A stretch of DNA of 64,000 bases from Mytilus edulis. Its lineage: Eukaryota. The position numbers and the translations under genes are program-made. The stretch's first letter is position 1. Every line of letters starts with the position of its first letter. The notes below the pieces were generated by a model, which searched no databases, was not told where the DNA came from, and was given only the letters and a program-made list of their open reading frames with translations. The stretch spans positions 104,160,001 to 104,224,000 of the forward strand of contig NC_092344.1 of the NCBI RefSeq assembly GCF_963676685.1, read 5' to 3'. This document shows, one piece after another, positions 9,366-19,218 of this stretch.

Positions 9366-11452
9366 CTAAATTGTAGTGATCAATAATATACTATTTAAAA
9401 TAAATTTCCATGATCACTGATTACGAAAATATAAAAAAAAGAAAAATCTGTAGAAAAATGGATCACCATAGCGAAAATGCGCTGATCACGAAGATGAAAA
9501 TAACCCATCAAGCACCGTGGTATTTTTTATGATCTAACTATTATTCACTAAAGCATGGCATAAACTTGAACTACCAACTTTTTAAAAGGTATTTGCAGAA
9601 GTGACAAATGAATGCTTACACTTTCATTAGTTTATATGTCTATGAGTTATATTGTGCACTTACAAATAAAAATCAAAGAGCTGAAGAGCTCTGAGGGGAA
9701 AGACGGCCATTGTTTCTATTTTTTGGGTATCTTTTGTTAGTCTACATACTAGAATGAGCAAAAGAACAGCTAGAACATTTTGAAAGGTTGACAATAATGA
9801 AACTAATTGTTGTTTGTTGTTATTTTATTTCCTTAGTCAAGAATTCATCATAGAGACAATTTTGACCAATTAGATCCGCACCTTCTAAATCAAAACATTT
9901 GATTAAAATGGGGAGTTAATTATCTATTAAAAACTCAATTGAATTTAACAACCACTACAATATATTTTAGAATTTTCATTATGTACCACTGAACGGCAGG
10001 CTATGACCATTCTCAATTTTTTGTGACAGTACTCTCAAGATTTTTTTTAATTTTTGTTCAAGAAAGAGAGGACTGAAAAATCTTTTTAGTTTTTCCATTA
10101 ACAAAGTTCCCAGTTACAACTCTCATCACAGGGATACATGTACTTATAAAATCAAATATGATTGATATAAGCTGTGTGAAGTTTGTTTCCAGATCCCACA
10201 TTTTGATATATTTGTAAATTTTATGAATAAGTAGCTTAAACTACAAAAAGCAACATTTAAAAAAAAATGAAGAAAATTAAGTTGGTATATAAAATTATTC
10301 TTTTATTGAAGACTACTTATCACATACTTAATGTCACATTTTTAGTGTTCAGATACATTAACTTTCATTTTACAGTCGGAAACCAGGTTGAAATAGAACA
10401 AAATAATCGAAGCTCTTTGTTAGAGAAGGCGATAAATGTGTACTGTAATGTTTACTATAGTCACAAAAAATTTAAAAGTTAATAGAAAAAAACAAAATTA
10501 CAATTTTCTTCTCAATTACAAAGTGTTTTATTTTAAAAACACCATTTGCATAAGTTTTCCATTTATCTAGTACATAGTTAAATAGAACAATTAGATATAA
10601 AGTCGACGACATGGGTATCTTTCAAGTTGGATGAAAAAAAATGCATAACCTCTGATTTTTAATTTTTTTTACCACGGACGGAAAACATATCAATCTATCA
10701 GTTCAGTAATTTTCGTGTCTGCCCTTCCATTATGTGACTCAAGACAAAATTCTTAAAAATGAATAACAATAGTATCGAAAGAGGAAACTCGAGTGCACCT
10801 TTTTATGTTAGGGCGTGTTTGATTTGTATATTTTGTCTTGATATCGTAAAAATCAAGAATATTTCATACATCGTCTCGCTTCAGATTCTATTATTTTTAT
10901 ATATCAAAGCTACAGGTTGACTTTATAACATAAAAAAATCACAGTACTAAAAGATGCAATATATGGGTCAAGTGAAGTACCTATCTAATGAATCACAAAA
11001 ACAGAGTAGGTGGGTTCGAATAGCTATTTTTTTACTCTAAGTACTTGACGACAGTCTTTCAAGTTGGATGATGAAAATGCATATCTTCGAAAAATTATAT
11101 CTTTTGTGTGTGATAACTAGGGTTTATAGTCTTCAACCACTAAAAAAATCTAGTCTGCCCTTCCACGAAATATTTAATTAGAATTTTTTTAAATGTTTAT
11201 TAATTTTCGAAAATTCCACCTGACAACCGATCAGACAATAGTTTTAAGTTGAATCAATGCAGAAAAGATCATTAACTGATGCTCATTAGCTAGTTGATAC
11301 ATTTGTCTTTTAAAATACAACTGACATATACGGATCGTAATGGTGCAATTGTGGATACATTTATCGGTTTCAAAGAGCAAAATTGGTAGCGCGTCATCCC
11401 TACAATGGCTTCCATTTCTACGATTGTGAAAATAAACTGGCGTAATGGGGAG

Positions 11453-11690
11453 ATAATTTTGACGAAGTAGACTCCTGACTGTTAATTACTCATCAATTGA
11501 GGTGCTCCTGAATTGGAGAAAGATTATAAAAACATAACTTTACAGAAAGATTAAAAACTGCAGTTGCTCTCCCCAATTTTGACGAAGTAGACTCCTGACT
11601 TTTTAGTGGATAATTACTCTTCAATTGAGGTGCTCCTGAATTGGAGAAAGATTCTAAAAACATAACTTTACAGAAAAAATAAAAACTGCT
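11453..11690. repeat. ~125-bp tandem duplication; related copy at ~18111-18220 on the other side of the Ngaro element
   Basis: GACGAAGTAGACTCCTGACT...TCAATTGAGGTGCTCCTGAATTGGAGAAAGATT occurs twice here and once (diverged) at ~18130. Confidence 0.7.
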
Positions 11691-11829
11691 AAAATCAGGT
11701 ATAAACAGATTAGTGTCTGTAAAATCAGGTATAAACAGATTAGTGTCTGTATTTTCGCATTACATTAGAATACGTTAGAGTAATCAGATCGAAATTTAGA
11801 GTTAGAAGTTTGAAGTTAAAAGTTTGACG

Positions 11830-13092
11830 ATGGCCGACAGACCTCGCAGAGACGTCCATGGATTGAATTATAAGTCACTATCGGAGTACGGGATCCCAGA
11901 TGCGGGGGAAACCAAAGAGGAGAAGAAACTTGAAGATCCAAGCAGTGTTAAAAGGAAGTTGGACGTGAGGGACGAGAAAAAATCTCTAAGCAGTGCGAAG
12001 AAGAAGTTGGCGGCAGCCCTCAGTCTAGACAAATCCTGCAATGAAGATGATGCTGAAGACGAGGAGTTGAGATGTTTAAGGGCGGAGTTAAAAAGCACAG
12101 AAGATGATTTAAAATCACAGAGATTACAAAACGAAAAGTTGAAGTTGAAGGAAGAGTTAAAGAGAAAACAGCAGGAGTTAGAAAAAGAGAAAGGTGAGAG
12201 TAAAAGTACTTTACATAAGAAAGTGGCTACGACATCTAGCGACAAAAGTAAAGAGAAGGTTTTACGGGAAAAATCAATTAAAGACCCTTCACTAAATGAA
12301 CTTAGGCAATTTGAAAAATTAAACGAAATAGTAGACAAGAAGTTATCAAAGCTAGGTCTTCTTGAGCAAACAATTGATTCTGATTCGTCTTCTAGTACTT
12401 CATCTGAAAAATCTCACTCTGTCACTGTTAAGAAGGGTAAAAAGAAAGTAGATTGTATCAGGGTTTCGGATAGTTCCGATTCAGAGTCAGATTGTGACGA
12501 AAAGAAAAAGAAGAAAAACAAGAAAACCAAGTCCGGAATTAAAGCAAAGGCTTCCGACAAAGTCAAAACTCAATTGCTCTGGCCCCAATCTGCTCTTCAA
12601 TATGAATTCGTTAACGAGTCTGTGTCCTTTAACGATTTAGATCCTAAACTTTTTACTGCAGGTGAGCTGGAGATAATTACAAGTAAAAACATTTCAGAAA
12701 AAGAGAGGTCAGGTCGTTTAAATCTACTAAAGAAGATAACATATTATAGCAATATTTATTCTTGGAAAGGTCTGCTATCTTTTTATGCTGCGTGGTTACG
12801 CAAAATTGAGTTAGGTCAGAAGTCCTGGGATGATGATCCATCGTCTATCGAAGTTCCTATTCTTACTCAGTATATTGTGCCTAAAGCAAAAACATCGAGT
12901 TTTCCCGCTAAGTCGTCGGAAAATAAGGATGACCAGGTTTGGTTTTGTACTCTTTTTAATAGGAACCGTTGTACGCACAAAGGGTCACATACAACTTTCA
13001 TTAAAGGTCAGCAGAGAGTAGTTCAGCACATTTGTGCAGTATGCTGGAAAAAAGATAAAAGCAAACTAAGTCATCCTGAATGTGCTAACTAG
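11830..13092 (+). CDS. Ngaro ORF1 Gag-like protein (coiled coil, acidic/basic tract, C-terminal Cys/His finger)
   Basis: First ATG at 11830; C-terminal [17 protein letters not shown]...HICAVCW...HPEC as in DIRS/Ngaro ORF1. Confidence 0.85.
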
Positions 13093-13109: not shown

Positions 13110-14948
13110 ATGAATCCTGACGCTGAAATTTTTTATCCTGAATATTTGAAACGAAATCAAGCACGTAAAATTTTTTCTAGTTCCAATACGGTAGTATATG
13201 AAGGTAATAGAGATTTTTCAAATTGTTCAGTTTGCAAAGAAGTACACAATTTAGATAAACATTGGTTTGAGTTTTTAGAAAGATCTGTGTCGGATCACGA
13301 ACTTATTATGAGTTCGCAGAAGTATAATTTTGAGGATAGTAAAATCCCAGTGGTTTCGCATTTGAATATAGACTTCTTCAAATTCATGTTAACAGATTAT
13401 TTTGATAGAAACATTTGTCAATTTTTGGAATTCGGTTTTCCTATTGGTTGTGAAAATTGTACTGAATTTTCTTCTGAGAAGATCGTTCAAAATCACAAGG
13501 GAGCGGTCGAGTTCCCGGATGATTTAGAGAAATATTTGAAAAAAGAAATCGAGAAGAAAGCAGTATTAGGACCGTTTCACGTAAATCCGTTTTCTCATGA
13601 TATTGTCATTTCGCCGCTGAATAGTGTTCCCAAAAAAGGTTCTCAGGAACGGAGGATCATCTTAGACTTAAGTGTAAAAGGAGGGGGTGCTATCAACGGT
13701 TATATTGACAAAGACAGCTATTTAGGAAATGAGGTTCATTTAAAATATCCAAATGTTGATGCATTAGTAGAGCTTATTAAAAAGCATGGTCGGAACTGTT
13801 TTATTTTCAAACGGGACTTGAGTAGGGCTTACAGACAAATTTTCATTGACTTACACGATGTGCACTTAGTTGGATACAAATGGAATGATCATTTATATTT
13901 CGATAGAGTCCTCAGCATGGGTTTGCGATCAGCTGCTCATATTTGCCAGCGTGTTACAAATGCAGTTGCTTTCATGTATCGGCAAATGGGATTTGATATA
14001 GTAAACTATTTAGATGATTTTGCGGGGGTGGAATCAGTTGACAGAGCCGATAAGGCATATATTGAATTAAAGCGTTTACTTGATTCCTGTGGTTTAGAAG
14101 AATCGTCTCATAAGGCAGTTTCTCCTAGTACTAGGATGGAGTTTCTGGGGATAATATGTGATACTAGTAAACTTTTGTTACAAATTCCTGACGATAAATT
14201 AAAAGATATTCAGGAAATTTTACTTTTTTGGACAAACAAGAGATCTGCCAAATTACGCGATATTCAATCGTTGGTAGGGAAATTAAATTTTATGGCGAGC
14301 TGTGTTAGACCTGGACGTATATTTATGAGCAGGTTGCTCAATTGGCTTAGATCAGCTTACGATCAAACTGGTTATATTGTAGTGCCTAGTTATGTTCAAA
14401 ATGATATATTGTGGTGGGTCAATTTTCTACCTCATTACAACGGCATATCAATGATGATGATAGAGGAATGGTCGATACCGGACGAAGTTTTTTCTTCTGA
14501 CGCTTGCTTGTCGGGTTGCGGTGGTTGGTTTGGTGGAAAATTCTTTCATCAAGTTTTTCCAGAATTTATTATGGAGTCTAATCTACATATAAACTGTCTC
14601 GAGTTATTATCTATTATAGTATGTTTAAAGTTGTGGGCGCAGTGCTTCAGGGGAAAGAGAATTCGTATTTTGTGCGATAACATTACTTCTGTTACTGTAA
14701 TTAACACTGGTAAGTCCAGAGATACCTTTTTACAGTGTTGTCTGAGAGAACTTTGCTACATTGCTGCTATATACGAATTTGAGATTAGGGCTGTTCATTT
14801 AGCAGGAACTGACAATAGGTTACCTGATTATTTATCGAGATGGCATACTTCGGATAAATTTGCTGCATTGTTCTATAATGCGGTATCAGGTTCATTAGAA
14901 GAGTTTAGTGCGGAAGAACATTTGTTTAAATTTTCGCATAAGTGGTAA
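13110..14948 (+). CDS. Ngaro reverse transcriptase / RNase H
   Basis: RRIILDLS, KRDLSRAYRQI, MGLRSA, YLDDF, FLGI; RNase H residues in SSDAC, HINCLEL, CDN, DNRLPDYLSR. Confidence 0.93.
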   Translation: MNPDAEIFYPEYLKRNQARKIFSSSNTVVYEGNRDFSNCSVCKEVHNLDKHWFEFLERSVSDHELIMSSQKYNFEDSKIPVVSHLNIDFFKFMLTDYFDRNICQFLEFGFPIGCENCTEFSSEKIVQNHKGAVEFPDDLEKYLKKEIEKKAVLGPFHVNPFSHDIVISPLNSVPKKGSQERRIILDLSVKGGGAINGYIDKDSYLGNEVHLKYPNVDALVELIKKHGRNCFIFKRDLSRAYRQIFIDLHDVHLVGYKWNDHLYFDRVLSMGLRSAAHICQRVTNAVAFMYRQMGFDIVNYLDDFAGVESVDRADKAYIELKRLLDSCGLEESSHKAVSPSTRMEFLGIICDTSKLLLQIPDDKLKDIQEILLFWTNKRSAKLRDIQSLVGKLNFMASCVRPGRIFMSRLLNWLRSAYDQTGYIVVPSYVQNDILWWVNFLPHYNGISMMMIEEWSIPDEVFSSDACLSGCGGWFGGKFFHQVFPEFIMESNLHINCLELLSIIVCLKLWAQCFRGKRIRILCDNITSVTVINTGKSRDTFLQCCLRELCYIAAIYEFEIRAVHLAGTDNRLPDYLSRWHTSDKFAALFYNAVSGSLEEFSAEEHLFKFSHKW

Positions 14949-15019: not shown

Positions 15020-15990
15020 ATTTAGAATTATTACAGTTAAAAGAGGATGTTAAAGTTTCTACTAGAGCAGCATATGCGCTAGGATCGAAGAAAAACTTAT
15101 TAGTCCAATGGAGAGCCTTTTTACTATTTTGCACGTACTTTAATATGAGTTTTATTCCTGCAAATTTGGATACTATTTGTTGTTATGCACAATTTCTCAG
15201 TCGGTCTTTTAAATCTGTAGATTCTATTAAGAATTATATTAATGGTGTAAAAGTTATGCATTTAATGTTGGATTGCTCTTTTCCACACTTAGACAGTTTT
15301 GTTTATAAATTACTGCTTAAAGGATTGTCACGAACCAAGTCACATATGCCACGTAGAGCTTTACCCATTTCACCAGATATTTTATTAGAGATGGTGGTAC
15401 ATTTTAATTTAGAAAATGGTTCTGATTGTGTATATTGGTGTCTTTTTTTGTTTGCCTTTTTCTTGATGTCCAGGAAATCTAACTTAGTTCCAGATTCTTG
15501 TTCTCAATTTGACAAGAATAAGCAATTGACCAGAGGTAAAGTCTTTGTTGTTAACGATATTGCTATAGTTGTTTTTGAATGGACTAAGACTATTCAACAT
15601 GGGGAAAGAAGATTAAAGATTCCGTTGGTTAAAATCCCTGGCTCTGTCCTTTGTCCGGTTTCTGCGTATAATCATATGTGTAGTAAAGTTCCGGCATCTC
15701 ATGATTCCCCTGCCTTTGTTATAAGTAAGAATTCGAAGTTGACACCAGTCACTTATGGTCAGTTCCAGAGAAAGCTGAAATCTGTTATTCTGAAGACAGG
15801 GAGAGATCCTAATCTATATTCATCACATAGTTTTAGGAGAGGTGGTGCCACTTTTGCATTTAGTTCACATGTACCTAGTGATCTTATTCAATTACACGGG
15901 GACTGGGCAAGCGATGCCTATAAAATATATTTAGAATTTTCTATGAAGGATAAAATTTCTGTAGTTAGAAATATGGCAAAATTTGTTTGA
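15020..15990 (+). CDS. Ngaro tyrosine recombinase (frame open from 14974; first ATG 15145; probable splice acceptor at 15019)
   Basis: Catalytic R (SRKSNL), K (WTKT), HSFRRGGA, HGDW and Y. The N-terminal segment AAYALGSKKNLLVQWRAFLLFC lies in frame upstream of the first ATG. Confidence 0.9.
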
Positions 15991-16001
15991 TTGTCTTTCA
16001 G

Positions 16002-16528
16002 AAGTTGTGACCAGTAAGAAGGTTTTGGTTTTTACAGATTCTATAGGGAAATATTTGGATGACATAATTTGCATGGATTTGGTCGCGGTCAGAGGAGCCA
16101 GGATATATTCTTTAAGAAACATGATTAAGGGTAGAGATATATGTTTAGCTAACTATTCTCATATTATTATTCACTTAGGTACGAATGATATAGTTAATAA
16201 CTCTGTTGACAAAATTATTGCTGATTTTAGGGAACTTATTGTTACTATCAAATCTTATTCATCCAGTATTAAAATTTTTATATCTTCTATTCTGCCAAGG
16301 CCTGTTGATTTTTCTTATACAGGTAATAAGTGTAAAAGTGTTAATTTAGAATTGAGCAGGATGTGCTCTAAGAGTAATTTAAGCTATATTAGGTCTTTTA
16401 AAAGATTTTTTCATAAAGGCATTCCAGTAAGGTCATTATTTGCTTTTAAAGATGGTGGGCTTCACCTTAATGAAGCTGGGCAATATGAATTGCGCCAGTG
16501 TTTCCAGCATGCTATTAATCATATGTAA
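16002..16528 (+). CDS. SGNH/GDSL hydrolase ORF of the Ngaro element (no ATG before the catalytic Ser; acceptor at 16001)
   Basis: Blocks VLVFTDSI, VRGA, IIHLGTND, DGGLHLN. Confidence 0.85.
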
Positions 16529-16594
16529 ATAATTTAGTATTTTGTATTTTGTCTTCATGTATGTCATTATTATTATTTAGTTTTTATAGGCTAG

Positions 16595-16810
16595 CCTAAA
16601 GGGAGTGTTTCATTCCTTAGGTGTTTGAATTTTCAAGGGAGTGTTTCATCCTTTGGATTCATTAGTGTATATATGTCTCTTTAAGGTACTCTACTTTTAG
16701 GAGAGATTTCCGTGAGTATCTCCTAAGTAGATCTAGCAGCTGAAGAAGTGTTTTATTCTTCCTGCTTGGAGTTGAACTTTCAAGAGAGTGTTACATCTCT
16801 TGGGTTTAAC
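16595..16810 (+). other. Structured RNA element: four stem-loops sharing the apical motif AGTGTTWYAT in the Ngaro 3' UTR
   Basis: Stems differ in sequence but still pair (AAGGGA/TTCCTT, CAAGGGA/TCCTTTG, GAAGAA/TTCTTC, CAAGAGA/TCTCTTG). Confidence 0.75.
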
Positions 16811-17200
16811 CACATCTGTAACTTGTTTGGTTTTGTTTGGCGGGCTAGTTTGGCGGATATTTAATTTTTGTGGCCCGCCTTAATTTATATTATTCTAGTT
16901 TAACTGAATAAGTATTAATATTTGTATATGTATTGGTAATTGTTCTTTATATTATTGTAATTCATGTATGTAAAGATTTATGTTTTCGGCCAAATAAATT
17001 TATATTATTATTACAGTCTTTTATGAAGCCAAGAAGTAATTGGTTTGTTTTTTCTAAAAAAAACTAGTAATTACGATGCGAAATATGTTCTAGTTACCCC
17101 CCTTTGGCCGATCATTTGATATTCTCGCATAACTGATTTTGAATTGTGTTCACTCCACCTTTAGTTTTAAAGTGAATTCTTTTTCCTAGTCATTACATTA

Positions 17201-17640
17201 CAAGGGGTACAATCAAAATCACGTGATGGATATACACACACCGGAAGTTACAATCGAACTCGCCGCTTGAAAGGTTAGTAGTTGCATTTTCTTGTTTATA
17301 TCAATTAAATTTTGATTAATAAGTTGGCACACCGAATGTCGGATAGTATGTAGTTTTAAAATACACAATTGTTTTTGCTAGAAAGCGTGCAGTTATTGCA
17401 AACACTTCGACGGTGAAATTTTGGAACTGTGTCGAAGTGTTCGCATTAACTGCACGCTTTCCAGCAAGGATAATTGTGTATTTCAAAACTAGATAGTATC
17501 CTACATTCGGTGCACTACCTTATTTATTAAATTTTATTGATATAAACAAGTAAATACGACTACTTACCTTTCAAGCGGTCTGCTCGACTGTTACTTCCGG
17601 TGTGTGTATATCCATCACGTGATTTTGATTGTACCCCTTG
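17201..17640. mobile_element. 440-bp fold-back MITE inserted in the Ngaro A2 repeat, 5-bp TSD CATTA
   Basis: TIR CAAGGGGTACAATCAAAATCACGTGATGGATATACACACACCGGAAGT with its inverse at the right end; arms pair almost to the centre. Confidence 0.88.
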
Positions 17641-19218
17641 CATTAGAATACGTTAGAGTAATCAGATCGAAATTTACCCACCCGCCCTCTCCTTTTTTTT
17701 TTATTTTTGTCAAATTTCTAGTTTATTTATTTTATTTTATTTTTGCATTTTATGCATCAGTAACTTATGTGGCGGATATTTAATTTTTGTGGCCCGCCTT
17801 AATTTATATTATTCTAGTTTAACTGAATAAGTATTAATATTTGTATATGTATTGGTAATTGTTCTTTATATTATTGTAATTCATGTATGTAAAGATTTAT
17901 GTTTTCGGCCAAATAAATTTATATTATTATTACAGTCTTTTATGAAGCCAAGAAGTAATTAGGTATAAACTACAACAAAAGTTTTATTTGTTTTATATTT
18001 TTTTCTAACCATTACAATAATTATGTTGGTATACAAAATTTTCTTTTAATAGAAGACTACTTATCATATACTAAATGTCACATTTTTAGTGTTCAGGTAC
18101 ATTTACTTTGATTTTAGTGGATAATTACTCATCAATTGAGATGCTCCTGAATTGGAGGAAGATTCTAAAAACAGAACTTTACAGAAAGAATAAATGAAAA
18201 CTCCCGTTCTCTCCCCTATCTCATGTATCTCCGATTGACATTGTTTACCGCGAAAGTTGACCTACAAATTATAGCCTCAGATTAAAGCATTGCATGCTAG
18301 TATGTGAATCATCTACACTACAGCAAACATCATTAGGTTTATATTAAACAAATACGGATTTTAAATTAGTATACAAATACTGTGAATGATTTTAATATTG
18401 AATAAAGGATATCTCTGTATAGTGTGGCATTCCAACAATGACGTCACTAGGTTAGATATATTTCGAATATTTCGTAGTACTGATTTTTCCGGACTGTAAA
18501 AGAAACGTATATAGTATAAGGGAAAGCTCAATATACGATAATTTCACGAGAAACAGAAGTAAAATATGTAAAATAAGTGTTTAAAGTCAATCTGTTCTCC
18601 TTGTCATCAATTTCAGTATGACATTTTAAGGGGGTTTCCAAACTATTAAAACAAAATGATTGACGTGAGGGCATGGAACTCTGGCCAACCACATAAGGGA
18701 ATTGACGGCTTGAAGCCGTCTTTCCCCAAAAAACTACACATTTAATATCCAATATCTTAAGAAACTTACAATGTCTCCATAACCTGTTACCAATGTAACA
18801 TAAACACAATCAACATGATCAAAATGTTTACCTTTCTGGAAGTTACCATGCAGATGATGTGCTCAGGCATATGTTATTACTGCAATGTTCTTGCAAACAT
18901 ATAAAATAGTCAAATATTTCAAGTCTGCAATCTAGCTGCGAGCATTCCTTATATTTTCAATTTTCCTTCAATCTAATTGCCGAAACATAAATGTACCTGT
19001 ATACTTGCTAAATATTGCAATGGAACACCGTCCGACAATGATTGGGAAAATCATTACAGGCAAGTCAAGGCTCTTCTAATGTTGAAGTCTCAACTTGAAT
19101 GGCAAACACCTGTATTAAGCTAATAAAACCAGTAATATTTATAGTTTAAACCATTTTTTACACGTCCGCAGTTTGTCAGAAATTCAAACTTTTCAATGTC
19201 TGAAAGTGGACAGTATAT

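What the first reader, a model, noticed from the sequence alone, without database searches (positions are those of the whole stretch)
16595..16810. Four covarying RNA stem-loops with one conserved apical motif in the Ngaro 3' UTR
Seen: hairpins at 16595-16621 (CCTAAAGGGA-gtgtttca-TTCCTTAGG), 16627-16660 (GAAT..CAAGGGA-gtgtttca-TCCTTTG.ATTC), 16735-16766 (AGCAG..GAAGAA-gtgtttta-TTCTTC-CTGCT) and 16771-16810 (GTTGAAC..CAAGAGA-gtgttaca-TCTCTTG.GTTTAAC). They form two pairs on either side of a fifth, unrelated hairpin (16691-16730). Stem sequences differ but pairing is kept through compensatory changes and G-U wobbles, which favours + strand RNA. The apex A-G-UG-UUW-YA-U (possible bulged G plus triloop) is nearly invariant. 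Inference: a multivalent protein-binding cis element (Gag zinc-finger packaging signal, RT recruitment or RNA localisation) between the last ORF and repeat B1. I know of no such description for DIRS/Ngaro elements, but cannot check the literature.
Basis: partly seen in the sequence, partly recalled or inferred. Interest (0 to 1): 0.82.

Follow-up and report, generated by a model that had tools for sequence, protein, structure and literature searches.

The report
Hairpin array in mussel Ngaro 3'UTR
A mussel retrotransposon of the tyrosine-recombinase (Ngaro) class carries, just after its last gene, a row of five similar bulged RNA hairpins whose shape is kept by compensating mutations in three related element families, so it is probably a protein-docking signal on the element's RNA, a feature I could not find described for this class.

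Summary
Window 16595-16810 lies in the 3'UTR of a young Mytilus Ngaro element (about 11 near-identical copies). It holds five hairpin modules, not four. The "unrelated" central hairpin (16690-16731) has the same build. Each module has an outer stem usually ending in U.G, a 2-nt U-W bulge on the 5' side, a 7-bp inner stem with a purine-rich 5' arm closed by A-U, and a loop G-U-N4-Y-A (8 nt; 10-14 nt in the central module).

Two sister Ngaro families in the same genome (68% and 60% YR identity) carry 5 and 4 such modules at the same offset. Covariation is strong, including in the outer stems that were not used to pick the units. Family representatives show 20 G.U pairs and no A.C, so the sense strand folds. 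Rfam gives no match, and the loop is near-invariant only within this family.

The array is absent from more distant Ngaro families. One of these carries a tRNA-Gln-like module in the same slot.

Best reading: a multivalent cis-acting RNA element that docks a protein. The partner and the step it serves are untested.

The parts
16595..16621 (+). Module 1: CCU/AGG outer stem, 1-nt A bulge, AAGGGA/UUCCUU inner stem (one G.U), loop GUGUUUCA at 16605-16612
   Evidence: In other copies the G.U becomes A-U (L012, L013) or G-C (L009), and the bulged A becomes U in L013.
16626..16661 (+). Module 2: 6-bp outer stem ending in U.G, UU bulge 16632-16633, inner stem CAAGGGA/UCCUUUG, loop GUGUUUCA at 16641-16648
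   Evidence: best hit of covariance model R1 in the window (43.2 bits)
16690..16731 (+). Module 3 (central): outer stem UCUACU/AGUAGA, UU bulge 16696-16697, inner stem UAGGAGA/UCUCCUA, 14-nt loop 16705-16718 that starts with G, ends with A and holds a small 4-bp helix
   Evidence: It has the same architecture as the other modules; its counterparts in L056 and L059 have 10- and 12-nt G-U...A loops.
16735..16766 (+). Module 4: outer stem AGCAG/CUGCU, CU bulge, inner stem GAAGAA/UUCUUC, loop GUGUUUUA at 16748-16755
   Evidence: 36.5 bits
16771..16810 (+). Module 5: 8-bp outer stem with two G.U pairs, UU bulge 16779-16780, inner stem CAAGAGA/UCUCUUG, loop GUGUUACA at 16788-16795
   Evidence: 43.1 bits. 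Compared with module 2 it shows G-C to A-U and U-A to C-G double changes.
16836..16856 (+). T-run followed by two GGCGG motifs at the UTR/B1 border. A similar motif (one GGCGG altered in L056 and in L059) stands at the same place in five other Ngaro families of this genome. It is context for the array, not part of it.
16851..17041 (+). Split direct repeat B1, identical to B2 (17770-17960); contains an AATAAA
15983..16528 (+). Last ORF (ORF4), an SGNH/GDSL hydrolase; its stop defines the start of the 3'UTR

Best explanation
The 3'UTR of this Ngaro element encodes a tandem array of five paralogous bulged stem-loop modules that fold in the sense-strand (genomic/messenger) RNA. Selection in the actively transposing lineages has kept the fold and a few unpaired nucleotides: the U-W bulge, loop G1, U2, the penultimate Y and the final A, and the closing A-U pair. 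The stems and the middle of the loop drift. The most likely role is a multivalent docking site for a protein on the element's RNA, most plausibly one of its own proteins (RT, or ORF1 with its C-terminal Cys/His tail). That would mark the RNA in cis for cDNA initiation or for assembly into the replication particle, as the 3' stem-loops of stringent LINEs do.

Shown: the structure, its conservation, the strand, the position, and retention in deletion derivatives.
Inferred: protein binding, the partner and the step served.
For: Fold and excess over chance: (z -3.8, -4.0 and -4.8 in the three families).

Orthologous arrays: they start 610-635 nt after the YR gene ends in families with 68% and 60% YR identity, while the linkers between modules cannot be aligned.

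Covariation on 30 module sequences:
- 87% of cells are paired against 67% in shuffles, with 86 double-change cells against 27 (0/500 shuffles reach this).
- Sliding the 3' partners gives only 39-58% paired.
- The outer stems, which were not used to pick the units, are 76% paired against 54% (0/500).
- RNAalifold recovers the same structure.

Strand: 20 G.U and 0 A.C in the 11 family-representative modules.

Conserved unpaired nucleotides: the U-W bulge is present in 11 of 14 modules. All 14 loops start with G and end with A.

Deletion derivatives: four different internal deletions join A1 to 16506, 16212, 15953 or 15443, and all keep the whole array.

Same slot in another family: a sister Ngaro family has a sense-strand tRNA-Gln-like module there.

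Literature: the primer and initiation site of DIRS-order reverse transcription is unknown (PMC7192593).
Against: - No binding, probing or transposition data exist.
- Expression of the region was not shown. The runs that hold it are only guessed to be RNA.
- The array was detected only in one clade of Mytilus Ngaro families. It is absent from 16 other Mytilus Ngaro loci (56% YR identity or less) and from 74 metagenomic Ngaro loci, so it is not a general Ngaro requirement.
- All modules descend from one ancestral hairpin, so shared features partly reflect ancestry, and rows in the covariation test are not independent.
- Internally deleted or 5'-truncated copies would keep 3' sequence under any model in which cDNA synthesis starts at the 3' end.
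- Loops are heterogeneous within the sister families, which argues against strongly sequence-specific loop recognition.
Confidence: 0.55

Rival explanations
1. The array is a sense-RNA element read by host factors rather than by the element's own proteins. It would serve nuclear export of the unspliced RNA (like a constitutive transport element), RNA stability, localisation or translational control.
For: - It sits between the last ORF and the 3' repeat, as the CTE of simple retroviruses does (established knowledge).
- The features conserved across families are generic (bulge, G...A loop ends) and do not differ by family.
- Loop middles vary freely within a family, as expected if shape rather than a family-specific sequence is read.
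Against: - No Rfam family (CTE, IRE and others) matches.
- A host-factor signal should be usable by all Ngaro families of the same host. It is confined to one clade, and another family has a tRNA-like module in that slot.
Confidence: 0.2
2. The repeats act at the DNA level. They would be imperfect palindromes bound by the element's tyrosine recombinase (arms flanking an 8-bp spacer, as in loxP/FRT, or folded single-stranded sites as in integron attC), or purine tracts that prime plus-strand synthesis like a PPT.
For: - 7-bp inverted arms around an 8-nt spacer resemble YR core sites.
- The 5' arms are purine-rich (4-7 of 7 purines; at least 5 in 10 of the 11 family-representative modules) and lie upstream of the first terminal repeat, where LTR elements have their PPT.
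- DIRS-1 uses single-stranded cDNA intermediates (PMC7192593).
Against: - 20 G.U against 0 A.C shows that pairing is selected on the sense strand only. The minus-strand cDNA would carry C.A mismatches, and duplex DNA has no such bias.
- The 2-nt bulge breaks the symmetry needed for dimer binding on duplex DNA.
- Arm sequences drift with compensation instead of being conserved.
- Element ends and the B1/A2 junction carry AATT, not the loop sequence, and lie 230 nt or more away.
- The array ends 40 nt before B1, so it is not adjacent as a PPT would be.
Confidence: 0.07
3. The array has no function. It would be a tandemly duplicated palindromic module that hitch-hikes in the UTR, with apparent covariation produced by common descent and by picking hairpins.
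For: - All modules are paralogues.
- Units were chosen by inner-stem pairing.
- The element family is young, so within-family copies are uninformative.
Against: - The outer stems were not used for selection and still covary.
- The architecture persists between families whose YR proteins are only 60-68% identical and whose linkers can no longer be aligned.
- The G.U-only bias points the same way.
- Decayed old copies (L153, L154, L155, L067) do accumulate non-compensated mismatches, which shows what neutral drift looks like.
Confidence: 0.08

Closest known systems
3' stem-loops of stringent-type LINEs (eel UnaL2, zebrafish ZfL2) and the R2 3'UTR, which the element's reverse transcriptase recognises (own knowledge: Kajikawa and Okada 2002; Luan and Eickbush 1995)
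   Same: - A conserved hairpin in the 3'UTR of a retroelement RNA.
- Structure plus a few loop nucleotides are conserved, and stems covary.
- Non-autonomous derivatives keep it.
   Different: - Those are single hairpins at the extreme 3' end, used for target-primed reverse transcription by non-LTR elements.
- Here five modules sit 40 nt upstream of split direct repeats in a YR element whose priming mechanism is unknown.
- Binding by RT is not tested here.
Constitutive transport element of Mason-Pfizer monkey virus and IAP elements
   Same: - A structured RNA between the last ORF and the 3' repeat.
- It carries a repeated recognition motif and gives multivalent binding.
   Different: - The CTE is one long stem with two internal loops bound by host NXF1.
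- There is no sequence or Rfam match here.
- The array is restricted to one clade of Ngaro families.
Array of five iron-responsive elements in the transferrin receptor 3'UTR; single bulged operator hairpins such as MS2/PP7 and HIV TAR
   Same: - Short hairpins with a conserved bulge at a fixed distance below a conserved loop.
- They are repeated about five times in a 3'UTR for multivalent protein binding.
   Different: - The IRE has a CAGUGN hexaloop and a C bulge.
- No Rfam IRE hit was found.
- The analogy is in shape only.
Hairpin at the 3' end of DIRS-1 mRNA, noted by Poulter and Goodwin as a possible self-primer (cited in PMC7192593)
   Same: - A structured 3' region in a YR retroelement.
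- It has been proposed as relevant to the unknown initiation of cDNA synthesis.
   Different: - That is a single terminal fold-back hairpin in an element with inverted repeats.
- Here the array is internal and multi-module, and it is not at the RNA 3' end.
Retroviral and LTR-retrotransposon packaging signals (Psi) bound by nucleocapsid zinc knuckles
   Same: - Several stem-loops with exposed G-rich loops.
- They are bound multivalently by a Gag Cys/His domain, and ORF1 here ends in a Cys/His-rich tail.
   Different: - Psi lies in the 5' leader.
- The ORF1 tail matches no Pfam zinc-knuckle model.

Membership tests
Ngaro (DIRS-order tyrosine-recombinase retrotransposon): the host element | ORF encoding reverse transcriptase/RNase H | tested here: met
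   ORF 13110-14948 hits Pfam RVT_1 at E 9e-10, above the gathering score. An RNase H domain was not separately detected.
Ngaro (DIRS-order tyrosine-recombinase retrotransposon): the host element | ORF encoding a tyrosine recombinase instead of a DDE integrase | tested here: met
   - ORF 15145-15990 gives only a weak PF00589 hit (E 0.02).
- It has more than 1000 homologues, many named Tyr recombinase domain-containing or carrying PF00589.
- H-x-x-R-R-G-G and downstream Y residues are invariant in the alignment.
Ngaro (DIRS-order tyrosine-recombinase retrotransposon): the host element | Split direct repeats A1 ... B1-A2-B2 | tested here: met
   - B1 16851-17041 equals B2 17770-17960 (100%).
- A2 is 17042-17200 plus 17638-17676.
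- In the window copy A1 is only 11758-11798; it is full length in L015.
Ngaro (DIRS-order tyrosine-recombinase retrotransposon): the host element | Optional SGNH hydrolase ORF after the YR gene, and no methyltransferase | tested here: met
   ORF4 15983-16528 hits Lipase_GDSL_2 at E 4.5e-9. The D-S, G-T-N-D and D-G-G-L-H blocks are present.
Any curated RNA family (Rfam 15: IRE, CTE, LINE 3' elements, etc.) | Match to a covariance model | tested here: not met
   A permissive cmscan of 16400-18100 gave no hit in 16590-16810. The only hits are weak miRNA-like ones on the palindromic insert 17356-17484.
LINE-type 3' RT-recognition stem-loop | Hairpin at or next to the 3' end of the RNA, specifically bound by the element's RT | not testable with these tools
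   The transcript 3' end is not mapped, because the runs are of uncertain kind. No binding data exist.
Tyrosine-recombinase core site (loxP/FRT/attC-like) | Conserved inverted arms around a spacer that is the crossover region and is shared with the junctions | tested here: not met
   - Arms drift with compensation.
- Pairing is selected on one strand only (20 G.U, 0 A.C).
- Junctions carry AATT, not the loop sequence.

The most novel reading that the evidence does not exclude
The structured-RNA slot just upstream of the T-run/GGCGG-GGCGG motif and repeat B1 is the initiation module for minus-strand cDNA synthesis of YR retroelements, which is still unknown. The slot holds a five-hairpin array in this clade and a tRNA-Gln-like module in a sister family. 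On this reading the RT docks on these structures, as retroplasmid and LINE RTs dock on 3' tRNA-like or stem-loop structures, and starts or positions priming there.
Probability: 0.15. Interest if true: 0.85.

Novelty: new variant of a known kind. Interest (0 to 1): 0.6.

Why it matters
How DIRS-order elements select their RNA and start reverse transcription is an open question. No primer or initiation site is known (PMC7192593).

A conserved, covarying, multi-module RNA structure in a fixed slot of the 3'UTR gives a concrete, mutable cis element. It can be tested in binding, probing and retrotransposition assays. A different structured module (tRNA-like) in the same slot of a sister family strengthens the case.

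The covariance model also gives a search handle for non-autonomous partners, and the module features could help classify Ngaro lineages in bivalve genomes.

Tried and rejected
- Genome-wide pattern search for two apical motifs 15-45 nt apart.
- Rfam: no family matches the hairpins.
- Other species. 74 metagenomic Ngaro loci (57% YR identity or less) show no such array in a hairpin scan or with model R1.
I did not try to obtain it another way.
- Kissing-loop or cyclisation idea: the complement of the loop occurs nowhere in the element.
- Small-RNA precursor idea: raw miRNA-seq reads barely cover the array, and the stems are too short.
- YR-site and PPT ideas: rejected for the reasons given under the rival explanations.
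- Expression. The 20 runs that hold the stretch are only guessed to be RNA and are stored as contigs, so neither transcription, strand nor 3' end could be established.
Real copies were used throughout.

Full report
**1. Context**

The finding lies in a Ngaro-type tyrosine-recombinase retrotransposon.
- ORF1 runs from its ATG at 11830 to 13092 and ends in a Cys/His-rich tail.
- The RT ORF is 13110-14948 (RVT_1).
- The YR ORF is 15145-15990. Its Pfam hit is weak, but it has more than 1000 homologues. The best is a 100% identical Mytilus galloprovincialis protein, followed by M. coruscus proteins at 92%.
- ORF4, an SGNH/GDSL hydrolase, is 15983-16528.
- The split direct repeats are present. B1 (16851-17041) equals B2 (17770-17960). 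A2 starts at 17042. In this copy alone a 437-bp palindromic insert (17201-17637) interrupts it. A1 is reduced to 11758-11798.
- The genome (1.37 Gb) has about 11 near-identical copies of the 3'UTR and two decayed ones at 93% and 88%.

**2. The observation**

- The sense strand of 16585-16820 folds to -73.6 kcal/mol (z -3.8). The antisense strand reaches only -51.9.
- Hairpins with an 8-nt loop are far more frequent than in dinucleotide shuffles (5 against 0.79).
- They are also far more frequent than in 42 kb of control sequence downstream of other Ngaro YR genes. There, G...A 8-nt-loop hairpins occur 8 times and are never adjacent.

**3. Five modules, not four**

The central hairpin (16690-16731) folds as follows:
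- outer stem UCUACU/AGUAGA;
- UU bulge;
- inner stem UAGGAGA/UCUCCUA, closed by A-U;
- a 14-nt loop that begins with G and ends with A.

This is the same build as modules 2 and 5. Those have an outer stem ending in U.G, a UU bulge, an inner stem C-A-A-G-R-G-A and an 8-nt loop G-U-G-U-U-W-C-A. Modules 1 and 4 are looser variants, with a 1-nt A bulge and a CU bulge respectively.

**4. Conservation beyond this family**

A YR protein search of the same genome found many Ngaro families. Two of them carry the same kind of array starting 610-635 nt after the YR gene ends.
- The L056/L057/L061/L067 family (68% YR identity) has five modules. Their loops are GCAAUUUA, GUGUACUA, GUUCGUCAUA, GUUUCUUA and GUGUCUCA. 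The array folds with z -4.0.
- The L059/L060 family (60% YR identity) has four modules. Their loops are GUUCUCUA, GUAACAUA, GUAUCGUUUUGA and GUAUAUCA. The array folds with z -4.8.

Features across the 14 modules:

| Feature | Count |
|---|---|
| Loop starts with G and ends with A | 14 of 14 |
| U at loop position 2 | 12 of 14 |
| Pyrimidine at the penultimate loop position | 13 of 14 |
| A-U closing pair | 13 of 14 |
| 2-nt U-W bulge on the 5' side | 11 of 14 |

The linkers between modules cannot be aligned between families. The conserved core is smaller.

**5. Covariation and strand**

I aligned thirty 36-nt module sequences taken from real copies of the three families, without gaps.
- For the 13-pair structure, 87% of cells are paired against 67% in shuffles.
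- There are 86 double-change cells against 27.
- The covariation score is 0.63 against 0.24.
- No shuffle out of 500 reaches the observed value, and sliding the 3' partners gives only 39-58% paired.
- The units were picked by inner-stem pairing, so the outer stems are the independent test. They are 76% paired against 54%, with a score of 0.66 against 0.25 (0/500).
- RNAalifold finds the same structure on its own.
- In the 11 family-representative modules there are 20 G.U pairs and no A.C. Pairing is therefore selected on the sense strand. This fits RNA and argues against duplex-DNA palindromes and against the minus-strand cDNA.

Caveats: the modules are paralogues and the rows are related, so the shuffle counts are not probabilities. 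Old decayed copies (L153-L155, L067) do carry uncompensated mismatches, as expected after insertion.

**6. Distribution**

I built covariance model R1 from the modules.
- In the whole genome it found only copies of these three families, one weak single hit on C4, and one further locus with three adjacent hits (C10:17252548-17252660).
- R1 finds nothing in 16 other Mytilus Ngaro loci (56% YR identity or less) or in 74 metagenomic Ngaro loci.
- The array therefore belongs to one clade. It is not a universal Ngaro feature.
- The more distant families still have stable structures in the same slot.
- One family (L073-L078, 53% YR identity) carries a complete sense-strand tRNA-Gln(UUG)-like sequence there.
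- In six families the slot is followed, 25-110 nt downstream, by a conserved T-run plus GGCGG-N-GGCGG motif (one GGCGG altered in L056 and in L059). In the window element this motif sits at the border of B1.

**7. Other evidence on function**

- Four independent internally deleted copies join A1 to 16506, 16212, 15953 or 15443. All keep the entire array plus B1-A2-B2. This fits a cis requirement, but any 3'-initiated cDNA model predicts it too.
- The loop complement is absent from the element, so a kissing or cyclisation partner is unlikely.
- Element ends and the B1/A2 junction carry AATT, unrelated to the loops. The hairpins are therefore not the recombination core.
- Rfam has no match.
- Paper searches found no description of such structures in Ngaro or DIRS elements. 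The DIRS-1 study states that the primer for reverse transcription is unknown. It mentions only a 3' hairpin noted by Poulter and Goodwin.
- Contigs of runs from two organism labels hold the array without differences, but the runs are only guessed to be RNA. Expression, strand and 3' end therefore remain open.

**8. Reading**

Shown:
- a selected sense-strand RNA structure of five repeated bulged hairpins;
- conserved unpaired nucleotides;
- a fixed slot between the last ORF and B1.

Inferred:
- The array is a multivalent protein-binding cis element.
- I favour binding by an element-encoded protein (RT or ORF1) for cDNA initiation or particle assembly.
- Two reasons support this choice: the signal is clade-specific within one host, and a sister family fills the slot with a different structured RNA.
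- A host-factor role (export, stability) is the main rival.
- DNA-level roles and neutrality are unlikely.

**9. Limits**

Noticed in passing
window 17201-17637: A 437-bp palindromic MITE-like insert (arms about 84-88% complementary) interrupts repeat A2 in this copy only. All other copies and the contigs join 17195 to 17641. Contig depth over it is in the thousands, so it is an abundant family. It gives weak miRNA-precursor-like Rfam hits below threshold. Differences over it are mostly A>G and T>C, which could be family divergence or RNA editing.
   Followed up: partly
L074:3111-3184 (also L073, L076, L077); G000 Ngaro family with 53% YR identity: A complete tRNA-Gln(UUG)-like sequence lies on the sense strand in the 3'UTR, about 800 nt after the YR gene and about 80 nt before the T-run/GGCGG-GGCGG motif. 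This is the same slot as the hairpin array.
   Followed up: partly
window 16836-16856; L056, L059, L062, L068, L074 at the equivalent place: A T-run followed by GGCGG, 8-11 nt, then GGCGG is conserved in six Ngaro families (53-100% YR identity), with one GGCGG altered in L056 and in L059. In the window element it sits at the UTR/B1 border; the border was not mapped in the other families. In the window the first copy pairs with GCCCGCC inside B1 (16841-16880), a hairpin that cannot form at B2.
   Followed up: partly
L015 (G000:C12), L016 (C5), L003 (C6); contigs of runs X1 and X8: Four different internally deleted derivatives of this element join A1 directly to 16506, 16212, 15953 or 15443. They lose most or all coding sequence but keep the 3'UTR array and B1-A2-B2.
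   Followed up: partly
window 10275-11798 and 18019-18194: The window copy has only the last 41 nt of A1 (11758-11798), preceded by a 30-bp tandem duplication (11690-11749). The left flank (10275-10372, 11601-11683) repeats the right flank (18019-18194) at 88-94%, with another repeat (10372-11481) inserted between. The element sits in, or was duplicated with, a larger repeat.
   Followed up: no
G000:C10:17252548-17252660: Three adjacent hits of the hairpin-module model, 37-39 nt apart, with no YR match nearby among the listed hits. This may be a further family or a non-autonomous partner. The sequence could not be read.
   Followed up: no
window 12940-13089 (ORF1 C-terminus) and 15983-16528 (ORF4): ORF1 ends in a Cys/His-rich stretch (C-x7-C-x5-H, then H-x-C-x2-C-x10-H-x2-C) with no Pfam match. 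ORF4 keeps the SGNH blocks (D-S, G-T-N-D, D-G-G-L-H), has a sub-threshold match to the RNA-binding OSK domain, and overlaps the end of the YR ORF without an ATG of its own.
   Followed up: partly
L015 and L016 element ends; window 17037-17044 and 17957-17964: AATT stands at the B1/A2 junction and at the right end of the element in the window, L015 and L016. It also stands just before A1 in L015 but not in L016. It is probably the recombination core.
   Followed up: partly
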